Source: Macrostomum lignano (taxonomy: Eukaryota). Taken from it: a stretch of DNA of 64,000 nt. The position numbers and the translations under genes are program-made. Shown in pieces: positions 1 through 64,000 of the stretch (position 1 is the first letter of the stretch; each line of letters begins with the position of its first letter). The notes under the pieces are model-generated. The model worked only from the letters and a program-made list of their open reading frames with translations. It made no database searches and was not told where the DNA came from. The stretch is from NCBI GenBank assembly GCA_002269645.1, contig NIVC01001130.1, forward strand, positions 248,001-312,000, written 5' to 3'.

Positions 1-1125
1 CACTTTGCCAAAGGACGAATGGAAAGGCTGCATGAGCACCAGTACTTCGAGGCCATGCCAGGTCCGGAAACCGAGCGGGTCATGTTTTTCTACAATGAGG
101 CTCGCGTGGACTGCCTGGCTCGCAGAGAGGAATGGCCTCTGGAGATGAAGGAGTACTTCGTCAATCGTCCTGATCGGCTGTACTTTCGACACACGGTATT
201 TTCGAAACGCGTGAAAAAGTTTGCTCCCCAAAGCGCCCCCGGTGAACACGAGGTGCGTCCGATCAGCAGAATCGAGGAGAAGTTCGCTCGCAATCCGAAT
301 GTTCCGGCCAACGAGGATGTTGCTGAGCGAATATTCGTACTGACAGAGGACCGCATTCAGCTGGTGTACCATACCGACTCCAGCAAGATCGCGGCCAGCA
401 CTCGCGAGTATATAAAGCCACCAAATGCTGACGAGAAAGGCACCGTGATTCTTCTACCGCCAGATAATCACAGCACCTTTCAGGTGGACCCGAATAGGTC
501 AAGCAAAAAGGAAGTCGAAGTCTACCAGCTCATGCTGGACCTTATCGCGATCGAGGAGAAAACCAAGGAGCGCGTGCGGGCCTCGGAGAAAGAGTCTCTC
601 GATATTCTCAATGCCCGATCGCGGGAGGAGGCCGACGCGGAGATGGAAATCAGCCTGTACGACACGGAGAGGAACGAGAAGGCGAAGAAGCACCGCGAAG
701 AGCTGGAGCGCCAGCGCCAGGAGGAACTGATGCGCAACCGCGAGCTGGAACTGGACTACTTGGCGCCGTTCCTTGCTCAGCTGGGCGAGCCAACCAAGAT
801 CACCAAAGAGATCGCGTTCGAGCTGCGCAAGGTCTGTCTGGAGGACTTCAAGCACCGCCTTATTGACATAGCCAATCTCATCCAGAGCCGCTTCGAGAGG
901 CAGAGCGCGGACCTGCAGAAGAAGCAGAGCTGGTACCAGCAGAATCAAGTTAACATGTCGAAGAACGATGAAGAGGAGTACCTGAAGTACTGCAGCGAGG
1001 CCATGTTCAAAATTCAGATCCTTGAGGAGATGCTGCAGCGACACAAGAATATGGCGCCGCACAAATTCCAAGCGCTGGAACTGAAGCTGCGGACCGATCC
1101 CAGGCTGCAGGAGTTCTTGAATTAG
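1..1125 (+). CDS. DRC7: Dynein regulatory complex subunit 7 (DRC7/CCDC135), C-terminal part. The frame is open from base 1, so the gene starts upstream of the window.
   Basis: Recognisable DRC7 C-terminal motifs (FYNEARVDCL, RPDRLYFR, EKFARNP..PANEDVAERIF, LDYLAPFL, CLEDFKHRLIDIANLIQSRFE, EAMFKIQILE). GC3-rich codons. TAG stop at 1123-1125. Confidence 0.85.
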   Translation, partial: HFAKGRMERLHEHQYFEAMPGPETERVMFFYNEARVDCLARREEWPLEMKEYFVNRPDRLYFRHTVFSKRVKKFAPQSAPGEHEVRPISRIEEKFARNPNVPANEDVAERIFVLTEDRIQLVYHTDSSKIAASTREYIKPPNADEKGTVILLPPDNHSTFQVDPNRSSKKEVEVYQLMLDLIAIEEKTKERVRASEKESLDILNARSREEADAEMEISLYDTERNEKAKKHREELERQRQEELMRNRELELDYLAPFLAQLGEPTKITKEIAFELRKVCLEDFKHRLIDIANLIQSRFERQSADLQKKQSWYQQNQVNMSKNDEEEYLKYCSEAMFKIQILEEMLQRHKNMAPHKFQALELKLRTDPRLQEFLN

Positions 1126-3828: not shown

Positions 3829-4626
3829 ATCCATCCATTTACCTTCATAATATTTATAGTTTTCTTGATATACTCGTATAAACAGCGAAACCCATTTTGG
3901 CATAAATTATACACGAAGTAACGCAGTGGGATTTCGCTTTACAATAAATCAGGCACCCAATGTCCCTCGTGAATTCAGAAGCGCCCCCGCAGAAGCAGTT
4001 GCCGTAGTCGGGCCGAGATGCGCTTGATTCAAAAGTCGTAAAACTCTCTGGCAAACAGCAGTCGTCTTCAAAACAAAACCCGGCTAAGAAACCAGGGGGA
4101 AAGGCAAGAGATAAGCTTGAAAAAGCAAATAGACAAGAAAGAGAAGAGAGAAACGAGACTAAACTACGCCGGCACTCGAAACTCGCGCAGCTGCCGCCCA
4201 GATGAGATTCCGGATGAAGGGACGCTGAGGCTGAAGCCTCTCACATGGGCTTTGGCGGTCTGTTTTTTCTCCCTGAGAAGGACGGAAGGAAGGAAGGAAA
4301 GCATTTGGAATCCCGCATTCGTCTCCTGGATAGAGAGAAAAATGCTCTCGAGAATACGGCGCCAAACGGCGTCATGGGATCTTCTGCAAACTTCTAAACG
4401 CCCTACGTATTTCCCCATATTGAGCTTCACTATTCCTCTTTTAACACATATCGTCTTTTTTCTCCCGCCCGATTCCCGTTTAGCCAGGGTCCGGATTGGC
4501 TGCCGGCCATGCCAGCGGGTCTCACGAGCCAGTAAATATAAGAATAGAAGGAGCGCCAATGGCCTGCACTTCTAGATCAAAGAGCTGCTTGAGTTCAGAC
4601 TCAACCCACCAGCATTCCCAGCAGCA

Positions 4627-5902
4627 ATGGGCGCGTCCTTGTCAGCTTATTTGGCCCCTTGTCGGGTGCTGCTTCTCGGGCTGGACAACTGCGGCAAGAC
4701 CACCCTGCTGAGGCAGCTGGTTGCCAGGCACACCTCTGCAGCTGGCGGGACGGGTTCGTCAAAATCAATGTCGGCTTTGGCGACGGCGTCAGACGAAGAC
4801 GAAGCGGCGGCGATGTCGGCAGCGGCGGAGGCCAGCGATACGCGTCGAGTTCTGCCAACTCTCGGCCACTCGTCCGAGATTGTCCGGTTGCCGCAGGGTG
4901 GCCCCGATCTGGTGCTTACAGAGGTAGACTATGGATCAAGGAGATGATCAGGGAGATGATCAGGGAGATGATCAGGGAGGTGATCAGTGAGATGATCAGG
5001 GAGATGATCAGGGAGGTGATCAGGGAGATGATCAGGGAGATGATCAGGGAGATGATCAGGGAGATGATCAGGGAGATGATCAGGGAGATGATCAGGGAGA
5101 TGATCAGGGAGATGATCAGGGAGATGATCAGGGAGATGATCAGGGAGATGATCAGGGAGATGATCAGGGAGATGATCAGGGAGGTGATCAGGGAGATGAT
5201 CAGGGAGGTGATCAGGGAGATGATCAGGGAGATGATCAGGGAGATGATCAGGGAGAGGATCAGGGAGATGATCAGGGAGGTGATCAGGGAGATGATCAGG
5301 GAGATGATCAGGGAGAGGATCAGGGAGATGATCAGGGAGATGATCAGGGAGATGATCAGGGAGAGGATCAGGGAGATGATCAGGGAGATGATCAGGGAGA
5401 GGATCAGGGAGATGATCAGAGAGATGATCAGGGAGGTGATCAGGGAGATGATCAGGGAGATGATCAGGGCGATGATCAGGGCGATGATCAGGGAAATGAT
5501 CAGGGAGATGATCATGAGACGAGTTCCTGCCCTCAGGTCGGTGGCAGTAGGGTCTACCGCGACTTCTGGCGCTACCACGCGCGCCTAGTCGAAGGCGTCG
5601 TATTCGTCGTCGACAGCAACGATCCGGCTAGGCTGGAGGAGGCCCGCCGCTTCCTGTTCGAGGTGGCCACCAGCTGGGAGCTGCTCGGCGCCCCCGTGCT
5701 GGTGTTGGCAAACAAGCAGGACCTGCCGTTCGCTCTGCCCGGCTGGCAGGTGGCGGCCCGGCTGCAGACCGAGCTGCTGGAGCGGCTGGGCCATCCGACT
5801 CACGTCCACCGGACCGTGGGCCTCACCGGGGACGGCCTGGTGACGGCGCTGCACGTCCTGGCAAAGTTCATCAGGCAGAGGAGACGCTCGCCGCCCTGTT
5901 GA
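4627..5902 (+). CDS. Arf/Arl-family small GTPase. Exons 4627-4923 and 5537-5902.
   Basis: MGASLS myristoylation motif; G1 GLDNCGKTT; LPTLG switch I. Splicing GAG|gtagac ... ccctcag|GTCGGT joins in frame to give LTEVGGSRVYRDFWRY, then VFVVDS, G4 ANKQD and TGDGL. Confidence 0.88.
4941..5514. repeat. 12-bp minisatellite (GAGATGATCAGG)n, about 47-48 units, filling the Arl intron
   Basis: Direct reading, with occasional single-base variants. Confidence 0.98.
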
Positions 5903-8832: not shown

Positions 8833-10572
8833 ATGCGGAACTTGGCGCAGAGCCTGGACTTCTTCGCCATTAATCTGTGCTTTACAGTTGGCTATTTTGA
8901 CATCTTTAAGTTCCCACTGAGCTCAAACGGGCTGGGCGGCGCCACCTTTGTTGGAGTCTACGCCGCCGTCATGCTCCTGTACGGCATTCCGGCATTCGCC
9001 GACGAGGTCGCCTACCTCATGCCGTGGGACTGCGGCTCTTGCAGCCCGGCTACGCGGAAGTGGCTTCGCAGCTACGAGCTCATCGCCCTGATGCAAGCTA
9101 TTCAAGTTTCTATTGGCGAGGCCGAGGAGAAGCTCAACTTGGCTACTGCTCAGCTATTCACTCTGGCTAACTCTGGCTCAAATAGTCTTCGAATGCTCCC
9201 ATTTTATTCGAAAAACTGTCGGCTACTGGACACCTCCATGACTATCGGACGATTATCGGACGAAAACACGCTGGAGATGCTGGTGCAGCCTTCTTGCATG
9301 AGACGGCCTCGAAACGAGATCGGCTGCCTAATGCAGCTGCTGTTTGCGAATCCCAGTGCAGTCCTATTCTACACTTGTATTATGCTTTCGCTAGTAGTAA
9401 TTTCCTACTTTATTATATTTGGCCGTTCACTGCGAACCTACGGAAAAATCGGTGGGATCTACATAGCACTGGTTGTGCTGTGCATTGCCACTCTGCTGCT
9501 CCACTTTGTTGGGAAGAGCAGGACGGAAGTTGGCGCGCACGATACCAGCTCAGCGCTCGCCACAATGGAAACTACGTTCGCCGGCGCGCTCGTGCTCTGC
9601 ATGCACAGTCTCGGCCTGGCCAACTTTCAAATTAGCGCCATTGGCGGCCGAGCCAATCAGGATGCAAAGCGGAGTTACGTGTCCCTGAGTATCTGCGTCT
9701 GCCTTGCCGACTCGGCGATTTCTGTCGCCTTCACCGGTCTGAGTCACCTAGTCAAATATTCTGTCGTCAAGCTCTGCAACGAGTCTAGCGGAGGCCAATT
9801 CGACTTTGACAGCTACATGTCGTTTCCCGACATGACCGATAAGCTGAGAAACGGCAGCCTCAGTACCCCAGTTTCCGTGTCGGTAATGCAGGGCGCGATG
9901 CAGCTGGCCGAGTCGGTGCTGATGTTCTACGAGACTAGCGGCTTTGTACCATACACCGTTTTCTTACCTTTTAAGGTTGTATTTTCTGGGGGGGGGCTTT
10001 TGTTGTGCCATTAAATTGGTTAAATCACACACATTCATTCGCCATCTAAATGATCTTTTCAGGGAATAATCCTGATGTTCAGCGTATTTCTGATTTGCAT
10101 TCAATTCGTCATAAGCGACCTGCAGGCGATCAGACTGTTCCGCTGTTCGTGGGCAGTGCTCAGCCTGGCGGCGGTGCGGTTTGCCCCGCTGGCTGGAGTC
10201 ACCCTGCTCAGAATGTTCGGCCAGCTGACCAGACTGCCCAGGTACATGCTGCTCGGCGCACCCATCGCTTTCTTTCTGGTAAAGCTTTTCGAGTGCGTTA
10301 CGATTCACCTCGGAAAGGGATTCTCAAGCTACATCCATGATCGCCGGACTCTTCTGAACGAGAAGCAAACGGTGCCGCTGTTCATCTTCAACTGGTACCT
10401 GGCGCCAAGCATGGTATTCCTGTACAACTTCGGCTACCCGGCTGCTTGCGTGGTGTTTATCATCACGGACCAAAAGGAAATGTTAACAATTGGATTCTGC
10501 GTCTGCTTCCTGCTGCTAAACGCTTTGCCAATTGTTCTCACCATTGTAGTTGTGCATGTCTATTGGACCTAA
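8833..10572 (+). CDS. Divergent SLC6 (sodium:neurotransmitter symporter)-fold membrane protein. Probable exons 8833-9975 and 10063-10572.
   Basis: The N-terminus FTVGYFDIFKFP..GLGGATFVGVYAAVMLLYGIPAF aligns with SLC6 TM1-TM2 (AVGLGNVWRFP..GGGAFL.PY...L..GIPLF). Many hydrophobic helices follow. A phase-0 intron (AAG|gttgta ... cttttcag|GGA) joins the two ORFs, but the donor is weak. Confidence 0.7.
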
Positions 10573-11199: not shown

Positions 11200-12700
11200 T
11201 TTATAGGGGGAGAATAGAGGTGACCGACGGGGAACTAACGCGTCTGTCTTGCCTAAGCTCCCGGAGCAAGCGACAACATAAATTCTGGGCCATGCAGTGT
11301 ACGGGAGTTTACCGGGATATTGTTGGGACCAGCTGCTTGCCACCTAGATAGCTGCGGCTCGCCCGAATTTGCTAAAGCGCCAAGAAGTTCTCTCCGACTA
11401 ACTAAAAGAAGAGCCACCAGTTGATGTTGTTCTGCAGCTCTATTAGTCAGCACTGTGATGGAAAACACTGCCACAAATTCGGCTAGTATGGCCCGAGTTG
11501 AATGACACGCGCAGGTCAGAACACACGTCCTTGAGGCAACCCTAAGCCCTAGCAGCTATTCTATACGTGAGCGAGGTAGCAAGGAAACGAAGGACGGGCA
11601 CTGGTGAGCAAGTGGCAGGAAATGAGCTGGGATAGAATCGAACGCCGCTCCAACAATTGAATTAGAGTCGCTGCGCGTGGGATTATAGAGCTCCGCTATG
11701 GGTGATGAGCTTGCCAGAAGTTCGGCCCGGTGCCGCGCGCCAAGACTCCAGATTTTTATTCGTCAACTTTTCTTCTCTTACGCAAAACCTGATTCGATTT
11801 TCAATGAGCGGCCCAGACTGCCGCATAGTTTTCTTATCTCTTTCGCTCTAGCTGTTCCATGTATTTCCTTTAGCTCGTAGATCTCTACCCCAGCGCGTGA
11901 CTGGTTAGTGACGAATCCAGTGCTGCTTTATTGATGGGATGTCGCGCTGGCGTCACTGTGATATCCTTAGTATCTTTTAGGCTATCCAATCATCTTTATA
12001 TATATATTTTCTAACTCTGTGACGTCAATGTTTCTCTCCGTATGCCGAGATGTCTTCTGACTTTAGTAAAAAGAATTTGATACGTTCTGCTCACTGAGGA
12101 GCAACGTAAGCTTATAAAGCAAAGAGCGATTTTGCATTTTAATTCATTTTTTCGAACTTATTACATATGACTGTTACATCAATATACTAGAACTTCTAGA
12201 TCCATGAAGCGGGAGAAAGTGACTAAGGTTCTTAAAGCGTTAAGATTCCACCAAATTTCATGCAGACTAGCGAGGATTCCAAGCTAAACAGCGCAAGAAC
12301 ACGCGCCGAGAGTCTGTTTCCACTAACGTACTCTTGGGTCGTTGTTGAAGTATAAAATTTTGTGCAACTTCAATACGAGCAGCTCAAATAGCGTGCGCTT
12401 CTGATCTGCCTGCCTTTCTTCAAATTCTCCTCGATTGCCCAGCTGTTGGATTAGCTGTGGAGATATCCACTTCTCATTTGCTCCACTCCATTTCACCTCG
12501 CCAATAATTCACTTTCATTGGCGTTCCATGGCAATACTCCGTCGCTTCTCGTCAAGTGTTCTTTGCACAGTGGACAGCAGGAGAGAAAAAGAAGGCTAGC
12601 TTCCTCAAGTCCGCCGAACCACTGAAATTTTAGTCCAACTTTATAAGAAAAGCACTTTAATAATCGCTTCATGTATACGACATGGGGCCTATATATCAGA
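11200..12700 (-). pseudogene. Highly degenerate non-LTR retrotransposon remnant (approximate limits)
   Basis: Minus-strand QLSRWQAAGPNNIP resembles the pre-RT motif K...KAAGPDGIP, and a frameshifted GG(D)LNA-like APE motif lies near 12235. Many stops. Confidence 0.3.
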
Positions 12701-14156
12701 ATAGCAGCGTCTGTGGATAGAAGACTTGATAAACAATATTTGCCCAGAAAGGTTTACACCTGTCTGAAAGCGTGTTGAGGTTCGGCTGCTGAGAACTAAA
12801 CTATGAAGGTAAGCACAACAAGCTGGTCAGTAGGGGGCATAATTTAATATTTTGTGAAAATATCGGCAGCAGTAGCCAAAAAGAAGGTGCAACAGGTTCC
12901 GGATCAGCCAGCGACTCTGTGTGCTAGCTGAGCCACTGGGGGTGTTTGATCCTAAGATTCCACTTAGGCAACTTAGGAGTGGCTTGTTTTATAAAGATAA
13001 AAGTGTGCCTTAGCTGGGAACCAACTTAGGTGTAACCAAGAGTGAGAAAAGACTGAACTTATGGCTGAGGCACAGATTCTATATTACCTAGATGTGTCTC
13101 TGCAGCATTGTCGACTGATTTTCCATGCAAGAATGGCATTCTCGCACTCTTTTGCGTGCAGGAATGGATGTCTATGGTAAAATCTCACTGAAAAAGCATT
13201 AGGCGCAGAAATGCATTCCTGCACGGTTTTGTGCAGGAATGCACGTTGAATCATCCGACAATGGAATTCCTTCACGTTCACTCGTGCGTGAAGGACATCG
13301 TGCACTCGTGCGCTAGCGCGCACTCGTGCAGATGTCATTCCCGCACTCGTGACCGTGCAGGAATATATCATTCGCTAGTGTATTTAGCGGTGGTAGTGCG
13401 CTACGCGCACTATGGTTGCGCTTTATGGTAGTGCGCTACGCGCACTCGTGTTTCAGCCATTGACGCACTTGTCAGCGTGCTAGATTCCTCCATTCGCTAG
13501 TGTATTTAGCGGCCGTCTCCGAGGCACCGAAACCCCCGGGGTTAGGGCCATAGACACTGGCTGCTGCTAATGTCTTGAGAGCAGCAGAAGCTACAGTCTA
13601 TGGTCAAAACCCACAAAACAGCTTGTTGTTCGGCTGGAGAGACCCATCTAAGGGTAATATAAATCTGTGGGTCGCTCTTCCTTAGGCGGAGACCTGAAAA
13701 AACTCAAGGGGGACAAAGCGCATTTCGCCAAAATGCAGAGCCACCTTCTGCGCCCCTCTCTTGGGTCTTTACCCTCCATAATCCGCCCCCTCAACAAATT
13801 TCTGGTTGCACCACTGATAGAACACACTCATGACTGAGTCCTTAGTTTGAACTTAAGTTGAAACTTAAGAGTCAGTCTTAGGACAGTTTTCGAAACAACC
13901 CTCAGGCACATAAACATAAAATTAGGCTATTTTCTATGCTGCATCTTTCACAACAAAAAATTTTCGCATCCTATCGGCTAAGAAGTTAAGTGTGAAGTTT
14001 TTTATTATTTAGAGTCCATCCAAACTCCAGTATACTTTGGTAACCTTGAGTATATCCAGTTAAATTTCGGAAGCCAATACCGTAAGCGCGCGGCACTCGA
14101 GCAAATGTAGGTGAAGTTTATTTAAAACGTTATTAAAGAATTATTTGATTTTTCAG

Positions 14157-14846
14157 TTCCAGATTCTACTATTAGAGTGGCAGCTTCCACTTCTGCTTCT
14201 GCTCCTGCTAGCCTGCTCAAGCAGCCTCGCCTGTTCGTCATCTCAAAGGAAAGCGGACAAGTCCGGCAGCAGTTGCTCCGCCGCCGTGGCCTCAGCCGCC
14301 GCGCACGCTTCAATCGAGTGCAATCCGTTTGAGCGGCCGGCACTGAACTGCAGCGGCGCTGGGGCGGCCTGCCGAGGCTACAAATGCATCTGCTCGGATG
14401 GCGGCCATGTCTACGTCGCCGGACGGGGTTGTCGCGACGTTGACGAGTGCCGCGAACTGCCGCAACCCTGCAAAGGCACCGGCGTCAGCTGTTTAAATGT
14501 CAAAGGCGGCTACCAGTGCATCTGCGACGCCGAAGGTCATCAATACCATCCGTTCAAGGGATGCGGCACTCACAATACGTGCCACTTCCCGTTCAAGTAC
14601 AAGGGCACTTTTTATCACCACTGCATCCGGTCACAGCACCACCGACTGTGGTGCAGCCGTACTGCCGATTACGACAAAGACAAAAAGTTTATCAACTGCG
14701 CGGCCGAGTTTGTCAGCCTGCACTGCCACTTCCCGTTCAAGTTCAAGGGCCGCGAGTACAAATCGTGCATTGGAACAGGCAACGAGAAATGGTGCGCCAC
14801 GACGTACAATTACGATCTGGACAGGCGCTGGGACATCTGCTATTAG
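14157..14846 (+). CDS. Secreted protein: signal peptide, EGF-like, Ca-binding EGF and two fibronectin type II domains. No ATG in this exon.
   Basis: Leu-rich signal peptide; cbEGF DVDECRELPQPC..CLNVKGGYQCIC; FN2 repeats CHFPFKYKG...C.....LWCSRTADYDKDKKFINC and CHFPFKFKG...WCATTYNYDLDRRWDIC. Acceptor ttgatttttcag ends at 14156. Confidence 0.88.
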   Translation, partial: FQILLLEWQLPLLLLLLLACSSSLACSSSQRKADKSGSSCSAAVASAAAHASIECNPFERPALNCSGAGAACRGYKCICSDGGHVYVAGRGCRDVDECRELPQPCKGTGVSCLNVKGGYQCICDAEGHQYHPFKGCGTHNTCHFPFKYKGTFYHHCIRSQHHRLWCSRTADYDKDKKFINCAAEFVSLHCHFPFKFKGREYKSCIGTGNEKWCATTYNYDLDRRWDICY

Positions 14847-16105
14847 TAACTCTGAGTCACTCCAGGTGCAAGGAGAGTGAAATCCTCCATGACATTTTCT
14901 AGGCTATTGTCAGACAAAAAAATTTGAATGAGAAGTATGAAATCATTTTTATCTTATTTTTAATCGGTATCTTTGATCAAAGTTTGAAGGCAAATTTCAA
15001 GGGAAAGAGGGGCGTGGTTTGGTATTACTAACTGTTGACCATTGTGTCGGTGTTGGTGCTTTTATTTTTGTTAATTACACACTACTATCAGTAGTCAGTT
15101 TCAATTGAATCCGACTACAAATAATTTTCAAATTGTCGACATGGATGCAAAAATTTATTGACTTTCATTTTTTTGGACATACAATGACAACAGCAAAATA
15201 CGCTGTCACTCAGTTATTACGTCGTACAGAGAGCCTGGTCTCGGGTGTAGGCGTCGACGCAGGTAGAAGGCCAGTGCATGACTGGCTGCACCTTCAAGAC
15301 CGGAGACGAGCGAGTTTCAAACGCGACACTGCATCGTTGCGCCGGCCCCATCTGTCCAAACGAATTGTTGCCAGGCCAAATCAGTTGCGCCGAGTTGTAC
15401 TGCCTGCAGATGGTGCACAACCTTACCGACGAAAACAGGCCCGCACTCGGCGTTTCGTCGACTGCCTTCCGGCCGATGCCGGTGCCCCAGATACGGTCGC
15501 TTAGGCGCTGGGGCGCACCCTGTGCTGCTACTTTTCCTTGAGACCCTAACTGATGCTGTTGTCGTTGTGTTGTTGTTTTTTTTTCATTTTCGTTGTTGTT
15601 GTTGTTGTCGTGCGTGTGTGCGTTCTGCAGACGTTGCTTCATCGGACCCACGGACAACGGGGTGTGCCGGTCGAAAGAACTTCATACCATTTTCGCTCAC
15701 CTGCAACACTCCAACTAGTGGTCCTTTTCTTCCTCCATACCGCACTCTGTGTACGCGGCGACACGTCCCAAGCCGATTTTCTGCCACCAATAGGCGGTTA
15801 TTTCAGTGACCGCGCGTATTGAAGCTGCGTAAGCGTACATGTAAATTTGACGCTACGACTGCCTGCACTACGATTAACTTTTAAGTTGTAGATCTTCTTG
15901 AAGCGCTCACTGCTACAAGTAGGCACCAGGCATTCAATTGTAAGATTAGTCGGCTTTACATACCTCCAGTCCAGCGGGACCTGCTCCTGGGGGGGAAGAA
16001 GGGGTGGCATCGGCGGTCTCGTTGCCTACAGTGGCCCGTTTGCAGTTAGCAGCAACGAGACCTTCCTGATCGAATCAACGCGCTCCAACTGGACACCGTT
16101 CGAAG

Positions 16106-28297: not shown

Positions 28298-29710
28298 ACC
28301 AAAACCGTACTCGGAGCAACAAAACAAACTAAATCTCATGACATAAATCGTAACTAATCTATTTGAACCAATATTCCTGCGCACACGGACAGACTGTAAA
28401 TTGGCAAACAATAAGCAGGTGGTTGAATATGAAAAATTCCTCATTGTCTCTGTGCAAGTATCTGATCTCTCTCTCTCTCTCTTGGTGCAATCAAGGAAAT
28501 TCATTTCTTTGACAGTTAAACCCTGGTCCAGATCTTTGTGTATACAACTGACAGGGAAAGGACACGCCAAGCTGAAAGCAAATAACCCAGAAAATGCGAT
28601 GCAATCTGCACTATTCTGGGAATAAGAAACTGTAAACTGTTTAACTATGCTTCGCTGTGACATATATCTAAACTACTGTAAGTAACAATTTCAGTCCCAT
28701 AAATAAAATGTATAACTTTTTAAATAAAAGCGCATAATAAAATTGTCAAATTAGCAACATAAAATGTTTAGAGCTGTTCATTTCTCCAAAGAACCGGTGG
28801 CTCGCACGCACCGTATATTTGCAAGCATCTATGATAAATACTGTTAAATAAATGCCAGGTTCTACATAAACTACAAAGATAATTATGAAAATTATTGCCA
28901 GTAAAAGTTAAAGCCCAACGCAGACATCAGCGGATGAAGTGCCTGAAATTGAAATAGGTTTTCACCATTTAATTAGCAATAAAATAGTTGAAATATCGTT
29001 AATGATGTACAAGTGGCAAATCAAACTCAGGACTTCTTAGAGGATAGATATCGGTCTGATCATGCTCAGATTCAACAATTGTAAAACAAAGCTCTCATCA
29101 TGTCAACTAACGAGCTAACGCTCGTAATATCGAAAGACAACAAATAGTTTATTAAGGATTGCTCACCTTGTGCTGTAGATTAAATTTAACCAACAGATAT
29201 CTGAAAAAAAGCAAATTGCAGAAGGAATTTTATCCAAAAATAGAGGCATTGTATAGAAAATCTGGTTGAAAGTTCGTTCGTTTGATATTATCAGAACTTC
29301 TTAGAGTTGCGCTACACGAGAATGCAATTTAATTAGGCAATTCTTCAACTAATTGTATTTGTCATCACGCCTATAGAAACATCTATAAACATATTTAATA
29401 ACCACTACAGCCGCTGCCAACGTTGTACAGCACTCACCATTTAGCTCGTACATGTAGCATTTTAGAACATCACAACCTGAAATGAAAAAACGTACATTTT
29501 ATATGCTTGGATAGAATAATATCAGTTATCAATTCACTTAGTCAGTAATACACATATATTCAGGACTTCTTAGAGGATAATGTTATCTGATCATGCTCAG
29601 ATTCAAATATAATATAGTTTCATCATAATCATCATTTTTTAATCATTGGGCAGCAATGATTCACCCAATGTTCGTAATAGCTACCCTACCATAGAAATTC
29701 CTACCTAAGA

Positions 29711-36086: not shown

Positions 36087-39000
36087 TTAACGCTTCCGAC
36101 GACTACTTCTTAATATTGGACGCTTAGACTGAAAAGTTGATTGCTGCAGATTGAACACGTTGCCGCCAGGCGGTTGCTGCTGCCCGTTAAATGTGAAACT
36201 AGATGAAGCTGCCTGTTGCTGCTGAGACTGGCCAGTGAATGCGAAAGCTGGAGTAGATTGTTGCAGCGGTTGCTGCTGTTGCTGTTGGCCTGTGAAAGCA
36301 AAGCTGGGAGTTGGTTGTTGCTGAGGCTTCTGCTGTAGGAGGCCTACAAAAGGCAAAGCTGGACCGGGCTGCTGCTGTTGTTGCGTCTGAGTTGTAAAAG
36401 AGAAACCTGTTGCTGCTGCCTGCTGCTGAGGCGGTTGCTGTGCACCCGAAAAATTGAAGGACAATCCGCTACTAACACTGACTCCACTGGCGCCACCAAA
36501 AGCTCCTAGTGAGGCAAGAGAACCGGGAGCTGATGGCACCTTGCTAGCGGCGCTAAGTAGCTGCTGCTGCTGTTCTTGTTGCTGTCCAAAAGAAAAGATA
36601 GAGAGCGGCTGCTGAGCCTGCGAAGGCTGAGCAGAATTGTTGTTAAACAGAGAGCTTGCCGTAGTCACGGGCTGATTAGGTTGAACAGCTGGAGCTGTGC
36701 CCTGGGGTAGGAATGAAAAGGTTGGCTGCTGCTGCTGTGCCGCTGTAGTGGTAGCTGTAGCTGCACTTGCTGGTTGCGTCATACTTGGAGTTTTCACCCC
36801 ACTAAAAAGACCGCCACCGGTACCGCCTGTAGAACTACTAGACGCAAACAGACTAGTCGTTAGAGACGGCATGGAGACTGTGCTAGCTATGGTAGCAGAT
36901 AACGGAGCGGCATTTGGCTGCGCTGTTGAAGCTGAAGCAAGTGTAAACGGCTGAGCCTGTTGGGATGATGGCGCGCCGAATAGTACGGCTCCGGCCGGGG
37001 CACCGCTAGCGGAAGCCGGGGTCTGAGCGGAAGAGGCCTGACTGAACAGACTGCCAGCACTGGCAGCTCCTATCGAAGAAGTAGCGGTAGTAGCGCCACC
37101 GAAACCACTGAAAGCGAAATTGCCAGATGACGATTTGGTGAGTTGCGACGATGCCGAAGCGGCAGATACGGTAGTTGTGGTCGTTGCTGTTGGCATCAAG
37201 GTAGAGAAGCTGCTTTGTGTGCCGGAGCTGGTAGCTTTCGATAAGGTACTGCCACCAAAGGTAAGGGATGTCTGCAACGGTGTGGTTGCTGGCGCCCGAC
37301 TAGGCAGACTGAACAGCGGTGGTGTCGCCGGGCTCGCCTGCGTGCTAACGGCAGCTGTAGAAGCGGCACTGTTGACTTTAAAGTTAAAACTGGCGGCGCC
37401 GTCGGCTGTAAAGCTAGAGAATGATGGCGGCAATAGCGGGACAGCGGTGGTTGGCGACTGAGTAACTGTTGCAGAAGAAAGTCCAGCGGTAGTGACAGTG
37501 GTGGATGTTACAGGTATGCTAGCAGCAGATTTGCTGCTTGTAAATGAAGGAAAATTAGCAAGAACAGAGCCTATTGTTTTCGGCGGCTGGGACTCAATCT
37601 GTGCACTAGGTTTAGCAGAGGCTTTATCAGCAGATGAAACTGATTGACCAAAGCTAGGCAATGTAAAACTGGGTCCGCCAGTAAATGACTTTGCCTGGCT
37701 AAGAGGCGGCAAGCTGGTAGCAGCGACAGTGGGCACAGTGGTTGTTGCAGCAACCGAGACAGGGGCAGTGGACGACACAGGCTTTGCCAGAGAAGGATTC
37801 AACGAAGCAGCCTGGCCTAGCAAGAATGAAGAAAGCGGCGCAGTTGAAGCAACAGTCGATAAAGAAGCTGTAGTAGTTGCAGCAGAAACTGACGGTTGCA
37901 AGCTAGTTGTTGGCTTAAAGCCACTGCTAGTTGCTTGTCCTAGGAGAAGAGACGGCATAGCTGCAGTTGTGACAGTGGCGGATGTTGTAGATTGACCGAA
38001 ATTTAACGATGGCTGGGGAAGGGTTGACTTGAGTTGATTGCTGGTTGAAGACGCGGTGGAGGCAGCAGTTGCAGGAGGCGTCTGTATGAGAGATAGAAGC
38101 GACGTGCTAGATGTGGTTGCGAGTCCCGTTGCTAACGACAAAGAAGGCGCTGTTATCGGAGCAGTTGTTGCCTGCGGAGCCGAAACTGAGGCAACAGATA
38201 TGGGGGCTACTGGCGCAGCCGGCTGGATGTTGGCTAGCAGACGCCGGATTCGATCGCGTCGGGTCTCCCGACGCTGGCGCTCTCGTTCTCGAGCCTGCCG
38301 CTCAGCCACCAGCCTGGCCGTCGGACTGCTGCCAGACTCTGCAGAAGTTGCCGCGCCTGGCATCGTAGAATCGTCAAGCAGACGCCGGCAGTGCTGCTGC
38401 CTGGCGGCTCTCTCTATACTAGCGACCAGGGCTGACACAGTCATTCGCGGCCGTTGCGGCGATTGTCGCGGCGGAGTTGACGAACGAGACGTCGACTGTG
38501 GCTGAGCTGACGGCGGCCTACCCGAATGCCCTGCGGGCTGCAACAAAGGGGACTGCAAAGGCGACGCTTCTACTGGACGGCTGCTCAGACCATCGGCAGA
38601 GATACTGAGCAGCAAGTCAGCTTGAGCTGCTGGCACGGCAGCGTCTGCCTGGTAATGCAGCGATGGCGACATGGAGATATCAGTTTGGCAAGACTCAGAT
38701 TTATTGCTGACCCCGGCGCCTGCATCAGAGTTCTGCGTGGGCGACAGCAGCACAGAACTGGTAGATGGGGGTATGGATACAAAGCAGGGGGACTCGTTTA
38801 GCCTGTGCGGCTGGTGACGCGGAGTCGGTAAGCCAATCTTAACAGAGTCGGGCAAAACCTCGCCCAGTGATGTCGCTTTAAACACGTCGTCGGTGCTAAG
38901 CTTCTGTCGTTTCTGCTGCAGATGACCATTTTTCTCAAGGTGATCGGGACGTGCCACCTCTGAGGCACTGTTATTGCAATCAAGATCAGCATCAGCGTCA

Positions 39001-39509
39001 TCGCTGACTATCTGCTCGGCAGCGGCGGCGGTGGTGGCCGTGCACGAGGACGACGCAGACGAGGAATTGATTTGCGAAGCGGACCGTTTCCGCGCCTCCA
39101 TGATGCGTAGACCGCGAAGGACACTTTCTCGTTGGTCCGAGTCGCCCAGAATGAAGCCGCCGTTAATAGCGGACGCGCCGGCGCTGGGCTGCCAGAACGG
39201 ACGTGTCCGACGTCCGTGAACATCGGCGGACGCAGCGATCGGAGCGGCTCGAACAGTCAGCACAGAGGATGCCAAAGGTGGCGGCAGTGGCGTAGACCCC
39301 TGCTGGTGCAGCTGGTCGACATGATTGCCGCTGTTGAATACTGACACGGGACTAGTAGTAACTGGCGTCGGTGGCAAAAGCAATCGGACGTTGTTGCTGT
39401 CTTCTATCAAAGAAGAAAAGATGGGCGTTACAGACGCGCCAGATGATGAAGATGCGGCCAAGGCTGACCGCTTTGAGAAGCTGTAATAGCCTGTGGCGCG
39501 GCGCCGCAT
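36087..39509 (-). CDS. FG-repeat nucleoporin, POM121/Nup153-like, 1140 aa, single ORF
   Basis: S/T/A/P/Q-rich C-terminal two-thirds with FG, FGG, FSFT and FNF motifs; basic tail RPILRSSRRKR; QRESVLRGLR..RKRS and QKRQKL resemble the POM121 ETVL.ALKE/NLS region. No Zn fingers or transmembrane helix are visible. Confidence 0.75.
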   Translation of the reverse strand: MRRRATGYYSFSKRSALAASSSSGASVTPIFSSLIEDSNNVRLLLPPTPVTTSPVSVFNSGNHVDQLHQQGSTPLPPPLASSVLTVRAAPIAASADVHGRRTRPFWQPSAGASAINGGFILGDSDQRESVLRGLRIMEARKRSASQINSSSASSSCTATTAAAAEQIVSDDADADLDCNNSASEVARPDHLEKNGHLQQKRQKLSTDDVFKATSLGEVLPDSVKIGLPTPRHQPHRLNESPCFVSIPPSTSSVLLSPTQNSDAGAGVSNKSESCQTDISMSPSLHYQADAAVPAAQADLLLSISADGLSSRPVEASPLQSPLLQPAGHSGRPPSAQPQSTSRSSTPPRQSPQRPRMTVSALVASIERAARQQHCRRLLDDSTMPGAATSAESGSSPTARLVAERQARERERQRRETRRDRIRRLLANIQPAAPVAPISVASVSAPQATTAPITAPSLSLATGLATTSSTSLLSLIQTPPATAASTASSTSNQLKSTLPQPSLNFGQSTTSATVTTAAMPSLLLGQATSSGFKPTTSLQPSVSAATTTASLSTVASTAPLSSFLLGQAASLNPSLAKPVSSTAPVSVAATTTVPTVAATSLPPLSQAKSFTGGPSFTLPSFGQSVSSADKASAKPSAQIESQPPKTIGSVLANFPSFTSSKSAASIPVTSTTVTTAGLSSATVTQSPTTAVPLLPPSFSSFTADGAASFNFKVNSAASTAAVSTQASPATPPLFSLPSRAPATTPLQTSLTFGGSTLSKATSSGTQSSFSTLMPTATTTTTVSAASASSQLTKSSSGNFAFSGFGGATTATSSIGAASAGSLFSQASSAQTPASASGAPAGAVLFGAPSSQQAQPFTLASASTAQPNAAPLSATIASTVSMPSLTTSLFASSSSTGGTGGGLFSGVKTPSMTQPASAATATTTAAQQQQPTFSFLPQGTAPAVQPNQPVTTASSLFNNNSAQPSQAQQPLSIFSFGQQQEQQQQLLSAASKVPSAPGSLASLGAFGGASGVSVSSGLSFNFSGAQQPPQQQAAATGFSFTTQTQQQQQPGPALPFVGLLQQKPQQQPTPSFAFTGQQQQQQPLQQSTPAFAFTGQSQQQQAASSSFTFNGQQQPPGGNVFNLQQSTFQSKRPILRSSRRKR

Positions 39510-41630: not shown

Positions 41631-42614
41631 TTGTTCTATGGAAAAGAAAGTCCGAGGATGCGTTCGCCTCGGCCAGAGAAACGCGTCCAAGGACTTTCGG
41701 TCACAGAACAATTTTTTAGTGGGTATGATAAAATTTTATCTCCACTTGTAAGACAAGCGGGTGTGGGGCAGAACCGTAGACTGACTGAATTTTCGTTGTG
41801 GAAGGACCCGCAATTCGTGGAGGCGAGACAGACATTGGATGCTGCTATGAAGGAGACCGTCCGCGAGGGAAACATACCTGGAGTGCAAGCCAGTGAGCCA
41901 ATTTCAACTGAAGTGGAACACGATCTATGGCAACGCGGACAGTTGGGGACTGAGAATCCGAAACTTTTGAGCACTTTAATGTTTTACATCGGCAAGTGCT
42001 TCGCCCTACGAGGTGGAACTGAACTACACGACCTCGAGTACAATAAGGACATTGTCTTGGAAACTGATCTGATTGGTGAGGCACTAGTTTTTAAGGAGAA
42101 CAAAGCCAACAAGAGCAATAATCGTGGGCTGAAGGCCAAGAGAAGCTTGCCTCAACGAGAGCTGCGAGCATATCACACGCATGGCCATGTTAGGTGCCTC
42201 GTCTGCATCTATAATGCTCACGTTGCCAAGCGTCCAAGCGAGTGTCAGGTTTGCAACCTGTTTCTGTCGTGTCTTCGTGCCGAGAGTTCTATCAAGTCTG
42301 GGAAGTGGTACCAGAATGCACCGCTTGGTCGCCACACGCTTGATAACATTGTCAAGGAGATCACGCAAGGAGCTAGCCTGCGCTTCACGAATCAGTCTTT
42401 GCAAAAGACCTGCGCCACAACACTGCATCGAGCCGGATTCGACCGAGGTGACATTGCTTGCGTCACTGCACTCCAGTTCAGCTGTGGAGCAGTACATTCG
42501 GTTCGACCATGGGGACCAGCTTCGTGTTGGGCAGGATGGAAGTGTGACCATCACTTGGGAGTGAGTTGTAAAAGAACTATTATTGACCAAATAGTGACTG
42601 CTAACGAAATGTAA
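41631..42614 (+). pseudogene. Crypton-type tyrosine recombinase (DUF3504/ZMYM-KCTD1-like), frameshifted and catalytically degenerate
   Basis: DPQF..ARQTLDAAMK, E..LW..GQLGTENP, FALRGGTE, RCLVCIY, KWYQNAPLGRHTL, FTNQSLQKTCATTL (canonical TNHSLRAT). The HSSSAVEQY segment carrying the terminal His and Tyr is in another frame after about 42465. No ATG start. Confidence 0.8.
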
Positions 42615-58000: not shown

Positions 58001-61000
58001 AATTGTCATATTTGCCTATTAAAGTGAAACCATTTCTGTCACTATTGTCCACTGATTACTAATGCATACAGTAAGTTATATTTTGCATCCTAACTTCCTA
58101 TGGTTTTAATTACAGTTGCAATGGATTAATCGCAATGTATTCAAAAACAATGTTCTTACATTAATTTGTGGACCACCCTACTGAGCTCATACACAAGCTC
58201 GTCAATACTGTACACAGGCACGCACTCACAACACGCTCACACGGGTGATTAAGCTTATCAATCAGACTTAATTGTGAGTTCGCTACGAATTGTTAATGGA
58301 ATATAAAAAAAAATTTTAAATTGCGTCGTAAATAGCACATCTGTTAGCAGATGCGGCCTGTGTGCGCCCCAGTACGCTAAATATGGGCAAACTATGCTCC
58401 CGTATCTACTTGTGCCTCAGCCGCTGCATCTCTTCTTCCATTCTAGTAACAGGCTGGCCTCTATATGGGAGACGTAGGCGGAGCGCTAATATGGGGGGGA
58501 GACTTTTTTCTCTTTTGGGCCGCCATGCATCCCTTTCTCTCTTCATCATATTTCTTCCCGAGGCGCTCGGGGCTGCCGCAGGCTTAGATCCAACATTTTT
58601 TTAGAAAGGGCCAGGCCGCGGCGGCATGCGGAGAGCAGCGGAGGGGACGCGAACTGTTCGGGAGGTATCGAGAAGGGGAATATTCTCCCTCCCCCCGGCC
58701 GGCTATCCCCAGTTATTTCTCTTCCCTCCCCCCCCCCCTAGCTTAGCTGCACTTTCCCGGCGATTTGCAAATCTGGCAAAGTTCTTGTACGCCTGAATCC
58801 TTCCCCCCCCCCTGGGCTATCCCACTCTCCTCGTGCCCGCAACTCTTGCGTTCCCCTTTCTTTCAGCCTCCCCCCCAGCCTTACTCTGTCTCCTCATATC
58901 TCCCCCCCCGCCCTAAAGTCCAGTTCGTTTCCCCTTGCCTGGGGTGTAGGAACTGCGCCAACCTCTGTCCTATTGGTACTTTATTGCACTGCCGTGTGCG
59001 AAGATCCTCCCTCCTCCTTTCTGCCTTGGGTCTTTTCTAAGACTCTAACTGGCTACCGCACTCTGCGCAGGGATGGTCCCTTGGCTTGATTTGCCCTTCT
59101 TTGCACACCTCAGCTTTTTTTGGCTACAGAACTATCCCAGGGAGCTGCCTTCGGCTCATTACTTATTGCTTCTCCTAAAAGGGAACTTTTGAAGACATTT
59201 TTGGGTATTATTTTAATAGGAAATTTTGTTAGAGAATATCTGCTTGGCCGGGCTTTAAAAACTATGCTATGCTATGCATATGGGGAAAGAGTCTAATTTG
59301 GCAGCTAAAAAAAGGCTGACCAAAATCCCAGAATATGTACTTTTTCAGTACTATATGCATGATTGCATTATTCTTTCTGCCTTCCCTCTCTCGGTCTAAT
59401 TTCTCTCGTTGTACGCTTCTTGGTGTGTCTGCTACAGAAATTTCTCTGCGCCTATAGAAGAGAACCGGAGACAGGGGACTTCTTCTTTTTTTTAGCCTCG
59501 CCACTGCCTATATTTTTCACGCCCTACTGAAGGTGATATGGCTGCAAGCTGTAGGTGGAGTGCAGCGAGACGGCGGTGGAGTAGAGAGGGAAGAATGAAG
59601 GTGAACAAAGTCGAAGGAGATTGAAGCAAGGAAGGGAGGGGTCATGTCAAATATAGCTATGCCTGTATGGCTGAGGGGAGGGGGTCATGTCAAATATAGC
59701 TATGCCTGTATAGCTGAGTGAAGGGGGTCATGTCAAATATAGCTATGCCTGTATAGCTGAGGGGAGGGAGTCATGTCAAATATAGCTATGCCTGTATAGC
59801 TGAGTGAAGGGGGTCATGTCAAATATAGCTATGCCTGTATGGCTGAGGGGAGGGGGTCATGTCAAATATAGCTATGTCTGTATAGCTGAGGGGAGGGGGT
59901 CATGTCAAATATAGCTATGCCTGTATAGCTGAGGGGAGGGGGTCATGTCAAATATAGCTATGCCTGTATAGCTGAGGGGAGGGAGTCATGTCAAATATAG
60001 CTATGCCTGTATAGCTGAGGGGAGGGAGTCATGTCAAATATAGCTATGCCTGTATAGCTGAGGGGAGGGGGTCATGTCAAATATAGCTATGCCTGTATAG
60101 CTGAGGGTAGGGGGTCATGTCAAATATAGCTATGCCTGTATAGCTGAGGGTAGGGAGTCATGTCAAATATAGCTATGCCTGTATGGCTGAGGGGAGGGGT
60201 AATTTCAAATATAGCTATGCCTGTATAGCTGAGGGGAGGGGGTCATGTCAAATATAGCTATGCCTGTATAGCTGAGGGGAGGGGGTCATGTCAAATATAG
60301 CTATGCCTGTATAGCTGAGGGGAGGGGGTCATGTCAAATATAGCTATGCCTGTAAAGCTGAGGGGAGGGGGTAATTTCAAATATAGCTATGCCTGTATAG
60401 CTGAGGGGAGGGGGTCATGTCAAATATAGCTATGCCTCTAAGGCTGAGGGGAGGGGGTAATTTCAAATATAGCTATGCCTGTATAGCTGAGGGGAGGGGG
60501 TCATGTCAAATATAGCTATGCCTGCATAGCTGAGGGTAAGCGGTTTGAGCCTTTTGCGCTAGATACGAAGCTGCATTCCCAGTTATACGAGTAACTGCAA
60601 TAGGCACAGATGCCAGATTCCATAGTATAGTCTGCGTGTAATTTCGACAGCTGAGAAAGCCTCTAGAAATTTAATTAAGTTTTTTTCCCTGGCCACTAGT
60701 GAACGAGCACTTTCTTTTCTTTCCTAGCCTCAGTTTTGCCTCTCCTCTCTGGCATTGATTTGCATACCGGCGGTCTTTGGACTCGTTCATCTCTTCATTT
60801 TTTCGGCTCCGCTCATTTCCTTCTTTGTAATTTGAGAATCGCGCGGCGGCGTTCTTTCACGAATTATGATTATGAAAAAGTGCATTTATTATTTTTTTAT
60901 ATAGAAACTATTGCTGCCTACAAGTCTAGTGGCAATATTGTTACAAGTGTATTCCAGCCATAATAAAGGCATTTTCCAAATCCCGACTCCCTAACAGCTT

Positions 61001-61342
61001 TCTGGACAAAGCCGAAGAGGTCGGTCGCGCCGACTACGAGCCTTCGGAGCAGGACATCCTTCGCTGCCGTGTCCTCACGTCCGGCATCTTTGAGACGAAG
61101 TTCTGCGTTGACAAAGTCCAGTTTCACATGTTCGACGTTGGCGGTCAGCGCGAGGAGCGCAGAAAATGGATTCAGTGCTTTAACGATGTCACCGCAATCA
61201 TCTTTGTGACCGCCTCCTCATCCTACAACATGGTGCTGCGCGAGGATCCGTCTCAAAATCGGCTGAAGGAGAGCCTGGACCTGTTCCAGTCTATCTGGAC
61301 CAACCGGTGAGAGGGGAGCGCTGGGCTGCCGGCACGGCTCGC

Positions 61343-63942: not shown

Positions 63943-64000
63943 GTAAGCAAATTGTTATATTAATTATAATCCCCCGGTTTTTAGGCTAGGTTCAGTTTGA

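What the first reader, a model, noticed from the sequence alone, without database searches (positions are those of the whole stretch)
14145..14250. Signal peptide with no Met: start codon possibly supplied by a spliced leader
Seen: the exon after ttgatttttcag (14156) reads FQILLLEWQLPLLLLLLLACSSSLA in phase 0, as it does after a second CAG at 14162. There is no ATG, and the nearby GT donors at 14107 and 14111 bring in stops rather than a Met. Known: flatworm spliced-leader exons end in AUG, which can act as initiator. Inference: trans-splicing would create MFQILLL..., making secretion of this protein dependent on the SL.
Basis: partly seen in the sequence, partly recalled or inferred. Interest (0 to 1): 0.7.

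Follow-up and report, generated by a model that had tools for sequence, protein, structure and literature searches.

The report
Secreted flatworm gene lacking start codon
A Macrostomum lignano gene for a small secreted EGF/fibronectin-type-II protein has no ATG of its own and most likely takes its start codon from the trans-spliced leader, a mechanism already known in flatworms, but no RNA evidence was reachable to prove it here.

Summary
An intact ORF (window 14115-14846, +) encodes a signal-peptide-like stretch, two EGF-like modules and two FN2 domains. It contains no Met codon.

The window is Macrostomum lignano (NIVC01001130.1:248001-312000). Its 35-nt spliced leader (SL) ends in ATG. Two tandem consensus trans-splice acceptors (tttttcAG|ttcCAG|, ending 14156 and 14162) sit in frame at the 5' end of the ORF. 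Splicing there would give MFQILLLEW... or MILLLEW....

The neighbouring gene is a precedent. Its GenBank CDS starts Met-less directly after an AG, and in two homeologs the first codon is TTG after cag|.

Rivals remain:
- The single-exon paralog's initiator Met lines up with the in-frame TTG at 14145, which could mean a lost ATG and a dead copy.
- An ATG-TAG plus a 46-nt candidate mini-intron lies just upstream.
- Chance-level upstream ATG exons exist, for example ATGAAG|GTAAGC at 12803.

No RNA data or homeologous copy of this gene could be reached.

Verdict: a plausible but unproven new instance of a known flatworm mechanism (Cheng et al. 2006). Probability of SL-supplied AUG about 0.45. Interest modest.

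The parts
14157..14846 (+). Single-exon ORF (229 codons plus TAG, followed by TAA) of an unannotated gene for a secreted EGF-EGF_CA-FN2-FN2 protein. It has no Met codon.
14149..14162 (+). Tandem candidate SL trans-splice acceptors tttttcAG|ttcCAG|. Exon starts would be 14157 or 14163. Both are in frame with the ORF and both match [T/C]TNCAG.
14157..14231 (+). Signal-peptide-like segment FQILLLEWQLPLLLLLLLACSSSLA. It has a hydrophobic core LPLLLLLLLA and S-L-A before the likely cleavage site. It is homologous to the paralog's LLLQPMLPLLLQLLLP...ATA|C.
14145..14147 (+). In-frame TTG codon that lines up, in ungapped register, with the initiator ATG of paralog P0068. It may be a relic of the gene's own start codon.
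   Evidence: phmmer offset +4
14105..14110 (+). ATG-TAG start-stop pair at the end of a possible 5' mini-exon. It falls in frame with the ORF once 14111-14156 is removed.
14111..14156 (+). Candidate 46-nt cis mini-intron (GTGAAGT...tttttcAG). The donor matches the M. lignano consensus GT[G/A]AG. If used in cis, the mRNA is non-productive.
14319..14564 (+). EGF-like module (residues 55-92) and calcium-binding EGF module (residues 94-136, DVDEC...).
14580..14840 (+). Two fibronectin type II domains (residues 142-181 and 190-228).
12803..12813 (+). Best rival upstream cis exon end: ATGAAG|GTAAG, in phase 0, with A at -3 and TATATA at 12690. It would give MK+FQILLL.... About this many such sites are expected by chance.
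36087..39470 (-). Precedent in the same window: the GenBank CDS of the neighbouring gene (1127 aa) starts Met-less at ctcaaAG|CGG, so the SL AUG would be in frame.

Best explanation
The locus is the 5' end of a single-exon Macrostomum lignano gene for a small secreted protein: signal peptide, EGF-like module, Ca-binding EGF module and two FN2 domains. The genomic ORF has no AUG.

Most likely mechanism: the pre-mRNA is SL trans-spliced at tttttcAG| (14156) and/or ttcCAG| (14162). The 35-nt M. lignano SL ends in AUG and joins in frame, so translation starts on the SL AUG. That gives MFQILLLEWQLPLLLLLLLACSSSLA|C... or MILLLEW.... Without the SL, neither the protein nor its signal peptide would be made.

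The TTG at 14145 lines up with the paralog's ATG. This suggests the gene's own start codon decayed after an in-frame acceptor arose 9-15 nt downstream.

Shown: ORF integrity, absence of ATG, organism, SL sequence, frame, motif match, and the precedent next door. Inferred: that this acceptor is actually used in trans, and that the gene is expressed.
For: - Organism: the reconstructed RPS3 is 100% identical to BOX15_Mlig030908g1, and 21,354 nt match NIVC01001130.1 exactly.
- SL sequence: CGGTCTCTTACTGCGAAGACTCAATTTATTGCATG. About 30-39% of genes are trans-spliced, and the acceptor motif is [T/C]TNCAG (PMC8629364; PMC5730564).
- The Macrostomum SL ATG is described as a likely translation start (PMC10468722).
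- The SL AUG serves as initiator in S. mansoni and E. granulosus, and many SL-bearing cDNAs need it.
- The ORF is intact, domain-complete and Met-less.
- The tandem in-frame consensus acceptors are rare, occurring twice in 128 kb.
- Precedent: the neighbouring gene's GenBank CDS is exactly the Met-less translation from an AG|. Its two homeologs start cag|TTG, with an in-frame TAG 15 codons upstream and no genomic ATG. For RPS3, the annotated 5' end also sits at an AG|.
- A start-codon hit as the only lesion in a 690-nt ORF would be an unusual way to find a pseudogene (inference).
Against: - No SL-read, cDNA or annotation evidence exists for this gene.
- Trans-spliced genes in M. lignano are enriched for conserved and neoblast genes, not lineage-specific secreted ones.
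- A consensus donor GTGAAGT lies 46 nt upstream of the acceptor. It would favour cis-splicing if transcription starts upstream of it.
- The paralog has its own ATG and is single-exon.
- With the SL AUG, the n-region carries E and no basic residue.
- No AATAAA lies within 750 nt 3' of the stop.
Confidence: 0.45

Rival explanations
1. Defective gene copy. The ancestral single-exon gene started at 14145 and ATG mutated to TTG. Alternatively, a two-exon form ATG-NAG|46-nt intron|TTC... acquired TAG at codon 2. On this reading the ORF is a very young pseudogene, null allele or homeolog in a hidden-polyploid genome, or the base is an assembly error.
For: - The ungapped phmmer register (query 4-228 against P0068 8-250) puts the paralog's Met exactly on the TTG at 14145.
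- ATG-TAG sits in frame across a consensus 46-nt GT..AG.
- M. lignano carries many redundant copies.
- The gene is absent from GenBank proteins.
- No canonical poly(A) signal was found.
Against: - All 229 codons are open, all FN2/EGF cysteines are kept, and its FN2 domains are better conserved than the paralog's.
- Start loss is only about 2% of possible first disabling hits (inference).
- The N-terminal alignment is mostly leucines, so the register is weak.
- The GenBank set omits many real genes, for example DRC7 here.
Confidence: 0.25
2. An upstream cis-spliced exon supplies the ATG, and the acceptor at 14156 is an ordinary intron end. Candidates are ATGAAG|GTAAGC (12803-12808, giving MK+FQI...), ATG...TGC|GTGAAGG (13261-13287, giving MEFLHVHSC+FQI...) and ATG|GTAAAA (13174-13176).
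For: - These are phase-0 ATG exons with consensus-like donors.
- The 12803 candidate has A at -3, a TATATA about 110 nt upstream and no upstream ATG between.
- Mean M. lignano intron length is about 1.1 kb.
- Flatworm acceptors are often shared between cis- and trans-splicing.
Against: - About 0.5-2 such ATG+donor combinations are expected by chance in 3.5 kb (own estimate).
- The paralog is single-exon with the ATG next to the signal peptide, so this needs several evolutionary steps.
- The nearer strong donor at 14111 would compete.
Confidence: 0.18
3. Non-AUG initiation at the in-frame UUG (14145) on an unspliced mRNA, giving MIFQFQILLLEW....
For: - The TTG is in frame and aligned to the paralog's ATG.
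- Near-cognate initiation is documented in eukaryotes (discussion in PMC9851317).
Against: - The context is poor: T at -3 and A at +4.
- UUG is a weak near-cognate codon (general knowledge).
- The strong acceptor 9 nt downstream would usually be spliced.
Confidence: 0.05

Closest known systems
Flatworm SL 3'-terminal AUG used as initiator methionine (Cheng, Cohen, Ndegwa & Davis 2006, J Biol Chem; 'slORFs', PMC9851317)
   Same: The SL ends in AUG, an acceptor sits in frame at the 5' end of an ORF with no other AUG, and the predicted N-terminus is completed by the SL Met.
   Different: - It was shown experimentally for Schistosoma and inferred for Echinococcus cDNAs; here no cDNA or read evidence exists.
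- The species is the free-living M. lignano, where use of the SL AUG has only been remarked on (PMC10468722).
- The product is a secreted protein whose signal peptide would begin with the SL Met.
Neighbouring M. lignano gene (window 39470-36087, 1127 aa) and its homeologs on NIVC01000834.1 and NIVC01001502.1
   Same: Same genome and contig. The annotated CDS begins Met-less directly after AG, and the homeologs have TTG where this copy has ATG, mirroring the TTG at 14145.
   Different: There the 5' ends come from the SL-read-based TBONE annotation. For the FN2 gene no annotation exists.
M. lignano paralog P0068 (254 aa; NIVC01001029.1, NIVC01003168.1, NIVC01003512.1)
   Same: Same architecture (signal peptide, EGF, EGF_CA, 2 FN2), single exon, 40% identity, homologous signal peptide.
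   Different: It has its own genomic ATG (ctcttgATGTTTCGC) and a basic n-region (MFRRR).
Tandem-FN2 proteins: gelatinase A/B collagen-binding insert, fibronectin gelatin-binding domain, seminal plasma PDC-109/BSP
   Same: Pair of FN2 modules with a conserved Cys/aromatic pattern. PDB hits: 1eak at 1.5e-25 and 1h8p at 5e-10.
   Different: No protease or FN1 modules. EGF modules lie N-terminal instead. The ligand is unknown.

Membership tests
SL-AUG-initiated flatworm mRNAs | The organism's SL exon ends in AUG | tested here: met
   The window is M. lignano. The SL ends ...TTGCATG, followed by GTAAG in the SL RNA gene.
SL-AUG-initiated flatworm mRNAs | The SL is actually joined to this acceptor in mature mRNA | not testable with these tools
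   No RNA-seq or cDNA access. No protein from this ORF is on record. Only the sequence motif [T/C]TNCAG is met, twice.
SL-AUG-initiated flatworm mRNAs | The SL AUG is in frame with the main ORF | tested here: met
   Exon starts 14157 and 14163 are both codon starts of the ORF.
SL-AUG-initiated flatworm mRNAs | No alternative in-frame AUG near the 5' end of the mature mRNA | tested here: met
   0 Met in 229 aa, and no ATG between the TGA at 14112 and the stop.
SL-AUG-initiated flatworm mRNAs | The N-terminus obtained with the SL Met matches that of homologs | tested here: inconclusive
   The paralog's signal peptide aligns, but its Met lies 4 codons upstream of the acceptor, on the TTG at 14145.
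Fibronectin type II domain proteins | Two FN2 modules with 4 Cys each and the FPF...Y...WC...YD.D motif | tested here: met
   Pfam fn2 E 8.7e-28 with 2 stretches. PDB matches to MMP-2, MMP-9, fibronectin and PDC-109. One conserved Trp is Phe in module 1.
Secretory signal peptide | n-, h- and c-regions with small residues at -3 and -1 | tested here: inconclusive
   The h-region LPLLLLLLLA has KD9 3.43, with S-L-A before Cys. The n-region has E and no basic residue. No dedicated predictor was available.
Pseudogene | Frameshifts, internal stops or degraded domain motifs | tested here: not met
   The ORF is open over 243 codons and the domains are intact. The only possible lesion is the missing ATG.

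The most novel reading that the evidence does not exclude
The gene handed its start codon over to the spliced leader. An in-frame acceptor arose just inside the CDS, the genomic ATG then decayed to TTG, and the same thing is seen in the neighbouring gene's homeologs.

The same acceptor can also be cis-spliced to a 5' mini-exon ending in AUG-UAG. The choice between trans- and cis-splicing would then switch production of the secreted protein on or off.
Probability: 0.1. Interest if true: 0.55.

Novelty: new member of a known kind. Interest (0 to 1): 0.3.

Why it matters
If confirmed, this would be a clean case in a transgenesis-ready flatworm model. A secreted protein, including its signal peptide, would exist only on trans-spliced mRNA.

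Together with the neighbouring gene, it would suggest that genomic start codons are repeatedly lost once the SL supplies one.

It also has a practical side. Such genes are missed or marked 'partial' by ATG-dependent annotation: this one is absent from GenBank's M. lignano proteins. The mechanism itself has been known since 2006, so the gain is incremental.

Tried and rejected
- **Exact-product look-ups.** I tried five forms of the ORF: the TTG start, FQILLL..., M+FQILLL..., M+ILLL... and the 127-aa out-of-frame ATG ORF. None is on record.
- **Word-index homolog search.** It found only a fish MMP-9.
- **Spliced RPS3 look-up.** The organism was identified by the permitted homology search instead, and the ids it returned were then looked up.
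- **Other organisms.** A mollusc or annelid was suggested by DRC7 hits at 57-59%, and an acoel (S. roscoffensis) has an SL that ends ...ATAGA, not ATG. Both were rejected after the 100% RPS3 and contig match.
- **SL RNA gene in the window.** None found. Rfam gives only SNORD61.
- **Other copies.** No second copy of the gene lies in the window or in the six fetched loci. The upstream 3.5 kb is not a repeat shared with those loci.
- **Homeologous FN2 copy.** It probably lies about 25 kb from the RPS3 paralogs on NIVC01000834.1 and NIVC01001502.1. I could not reach it with 10-kb flanks and permitted look-ups.
- **Stop-codon readthrough of ATG-TAG.** Considered and rejected: UAG UUC is not a known readthrough context.

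Full report
**1. Observation**

- ttgatttttcag ends at 14156, and the next codons read FQILLLEWQLPLLLLLLLACSSSLA.
- A second CAG ends at 14162 in the same frame.
- The frame is open from 14115 (TGA at 14112-14114) to TAG at 14844-14846, followed directly by TAA.
- There is no ATG anywhere in it. The 229 residues from 14157 contain 0 Met and 23 Cys.
- The GT at 14107 joins a frame with TAA at 14083 and no ATG after it.
- The GT at 14111 (GTGAAGT) joins ATG(14105)-TAG(14108) in frame.

**2. Organism**

The window is repeat-rich eukaryotic DNA with long exons.

A DRC7 exon (19-1125) gave only 57-59% hits, to molluscs and annelids. Ribosomal protein S3 lies on the minus strand: exon 1 at 41213-40902, a GC-AG intron, and exon 2 at 40282-39864. 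It is 100% identical to BOX15_Mlig030908g1 of Macrostomum lignano. The 21,354-nt locus fetched for that protein matches the window exactly.

This places the window at NIVC01001130.1:248001-312000 of assembly GCA_002269645.1 (Mlig_3_7).

**3. What the gene encodes**

Pfam finds two FN2 domains (E 8.7e-28) and a calcium-binding EGF domain. By inspection there is a further EGF-like module (residues 55-92) and an N-terminal hydrophobic segment with S-L-A before a Cys.

The closest solved structures are the FN2 inserts of MMP-2 and MMP-9, the gelatin-binding part of fibronectin, and seminal plasma PDC-109.

An exhaustive profile search found a full-length M. lignano paralog, P0068.
- It is 254 aa, 40% identical, and has the same architecture.
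- It is single-exon and present on three contigs.
- It has a genomic ATG (ctcttgATGTTTCGC).

The product is thus a small secreted EGF/FN2 protein of a lineage-specific family. Its ligand is unknown. A collagen/gelatin-type or phosphorylcholine-type binding role is only an analogy to other FN2 proteins.

**4. The SL premise**

The M. lignano SL is CGGTCTCTTACTGCGAAGACTCAATTTATTGCATG, followed by GTAAG in the SL RNA gene.
- 30-39% of genes are trans-spliced.
- The enriched motif at trans-splice acceptors is [T/C]TNCAG, and cis donors are GT[G/A]AG (PMC8629364, PMC5730564).

Use of the SL AUG as initiator is established in other flatworms.
- S. mansoni: Cheng et al. 2006, as cited in PMC9851317. 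[quoted passage not shown]
- E. granulosus: 143 of 187 SL-bearing clusters are full-length only with the SL ATG. Of 8 such cDNAs listed in that paper's Table 2, 4 have no alternative ATG within 5 codons of the SL (PMC3510090).

In this gene, TTTCAG and TTCCAG are two consecutive matches to the motif, and both are in frame. The tandem motif occurs only twice in 128 kb of the two strands. The single motif occurs once per about 360 nt.

**5. A precedent on the same contig**

GenBank 5'-partial CDSs in this assembly start at AG| acceptors.
- **RPS3** starts one base after cttcAG| and is annotated H+MATKN....
- **The neighbouring 1127-aa gene** has an annotated product that is exactly the translation from window 39470, directly after ctcaaAG|. 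It has no Met, so the SL AUG would be in frame.
- **Its two homeologs** start at tattccAG|TTGCGTCCG.... The codon that is ATG in the window copy is TTG there. An in-frame TAG lies 15 codons upstream, no genomic ATG is present, and the first internal Met is about residue 81.

So M. lignano genes that can only start on the SL AUG appear to exist next door, with the same ATG/TTG theme. This rests on the annotation's 5' ends being SL sites, which is how the TBONE pipeline defines them.

**6. What speaks against a simple reading**

(a) phmmer aligns query residues 4-228 to paralog residues 8-250. In ungapped register, the paralog's Met falls exactly on the in-frame TTG at 14145 (MIFQFQI-LLL against MFRRRLS-LLL). 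This suggests the ancestral start was there and mutated. That is compatible with decay after SL takeover, and equally with a dead copy. The register rests mostly on leucines, and 9 of 64 codons are one step from ATG, so the evidence is weak.

(b) GTGAAGT at 14111 and the acceptor at 14156 define a 46-nt candidate intron. Removing it puts ATG-TAG in frame. If transcription starts upstream of 14111, cis-splicing would give a non-productive mRNA. Short introns do exist here, for example an 87-nt one at 9976-10062.

(c) Upstream phase-0 ATG exons with good donors exist. The best is ATGAAG|GTAAGC at 12803, with A at -3 and TATATA at 12690. By my estimate 0.5-2 such sites are expected by chance in 3.5 kb.

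(d) Trans-spliced genes are enriched for conserved and neoblast genes.

(e) The gene is absent from GenBank proteins. This is weak evidence, because the GenBank set excludes non-coding and repeat-overlapping transcripts and also lacks DRC7.

(f) No AATAAA-type signal lies within 750 nt of the stop.

**7. Weighing**

- An intact, domain-complete ORF whose only defect is the missing ATG is what the SL-AUG model expects.
- It is an unlikely snapshot of a pseudogene, because start loss is about 2% of possible first disabling hits (inference).
- From a single-exon ancestor, the SL route needs only an in-frame acceptor. A cis exon needs a promoter, an ATG, a donor and an acceptor.
- The literature suggests that a sizeable share of flatworm trans-spliced mRNAs use the SL AUG.

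| Explanation | Probability |
|---|---|
| SL-supplied AUG | 0.45 |
| Defective copy or assembly error | 0.25 |
| Upstream cis exon | 0.18 |
| UUG initiation | 0.05 |
| Other | remainder |

**8. Known or new**

The mechanism is known (Cheng et al. 2006). M. lignano's SL ATG has been noted as a probable start codon. At most this is a new, unverified instance in a free-living model flatworm, with the twist that a signal peptide depends on it.

The recurrent ATG-to-TTG pattern and a possible cis/trans switch through an AUG-UAG mini-exon are the only potentially novel angles, and they are speculative.

**9. What would settle it**

- SL-trimmed read starts at NIVC01001130.1:262157 or 262163 in public RNA-seq.
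- SL-primed RT-PCR.
- Comparison with the homeologous copies and with M. cliftonense and M. hystrix orthologs.
- An ATG-less reporter with the acceptors mutated.

None of these could be run with the tools at hand.

Noticed in passing
window 39470-36087 (-); L002 7215; L003 7203: The neighbouring 1127-aa S/T/Q-rich gene is annotated as a Met-less CDS starting directly after AG. Its two homeologs start cag|TTG with no genomic ATG, so the SL AUG seems to be their only possible initiator. The window copy also has catttcAG|ATG 13 codons upstream.
   Followed up: yes
window 40902-40896 (-), RPS3 intron donor: The ribosomal protein S3 gene has a GC-AG intron (GCTCAG|GCAAGT), about 619 nt long. The homeologous copies have a much longer gene span (3.3 kb against 1.35 kb).
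   Followed up: partly
L002 2996-3003 and L003 (RPS3 paralog BOX15_Mlig008787g3): The annotated 'partial' CDS begins at GCC immediately after a genomic ATG (gcaagcATG|GCC). The genomic GCATG equals the SL 3' end, so SL trimming may have clipped a genuine genomic start codon. This could be a systematic annotation artefact.
   Followed up: partly
window 41217 (-): The window RPS3 copy would be trans-spliced at cttcAG|CCACATGG. The SL AUG would then open a 5-codon out-of-frame uORF (AUG CCA CAU GGC AAC UAA) overlapping the real start.
   Followed up: partly
window 29556-29629 (-): C/D-box snoRNA match to SNORD61, just above Rfam's gathering score (44.6 against 43 bits), between a 25-nt tandem array and the 340-aa gene.
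   Followed up: no
window 41631-42614 (+): 327-aa ORF with a DUF3504 domain (E 8e-21), probably transposon-derived. It is not annotated in GenBank.
   Followed up: no
window 4576-5588 (+): An ARF/ARL-like GTPase N-terminus (MGASLS...LLLGLDNCGKTTLL) lies next to a 12-nt tandem array (4934-5514, 48 copies) that reads (MIRE)n in an open frame.
   Followed up: no
window 19-1125 (+): The C-terminal 368 aa of dynein regulatory complex subunit 7 lie in one exon. No M. lignano DRC7 protein is on record, which shows the GenBank gene set is incomplete here.
   Followed up: partly
window 60930-61307 and 63705-63986 (+): Exons of a G-protein alpha subunit (…[14 protein letters not shown]…, …[14 protein letters not shown]…), separated by a 33-nt tandem array.
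   Followed up: no
window 14847-15600 (+): No AATAAA, ATTAAA or similar hexamer lies within 750 nt downstream of the FN2 gene's TAG-TAA stops, so its 3' end is undefined.
   Followed up: partly
L004 4935-5003: The paralog P0068 has a strong pyrimidine tract plus CAG (cctcctgtttttgcttgctcAG) 44 nt upstream of its ATG, and a TATA-like run just before that. It may itself be trans-spliced, with the SL AUG opening a 6-codon uORF.
   Followed up: no
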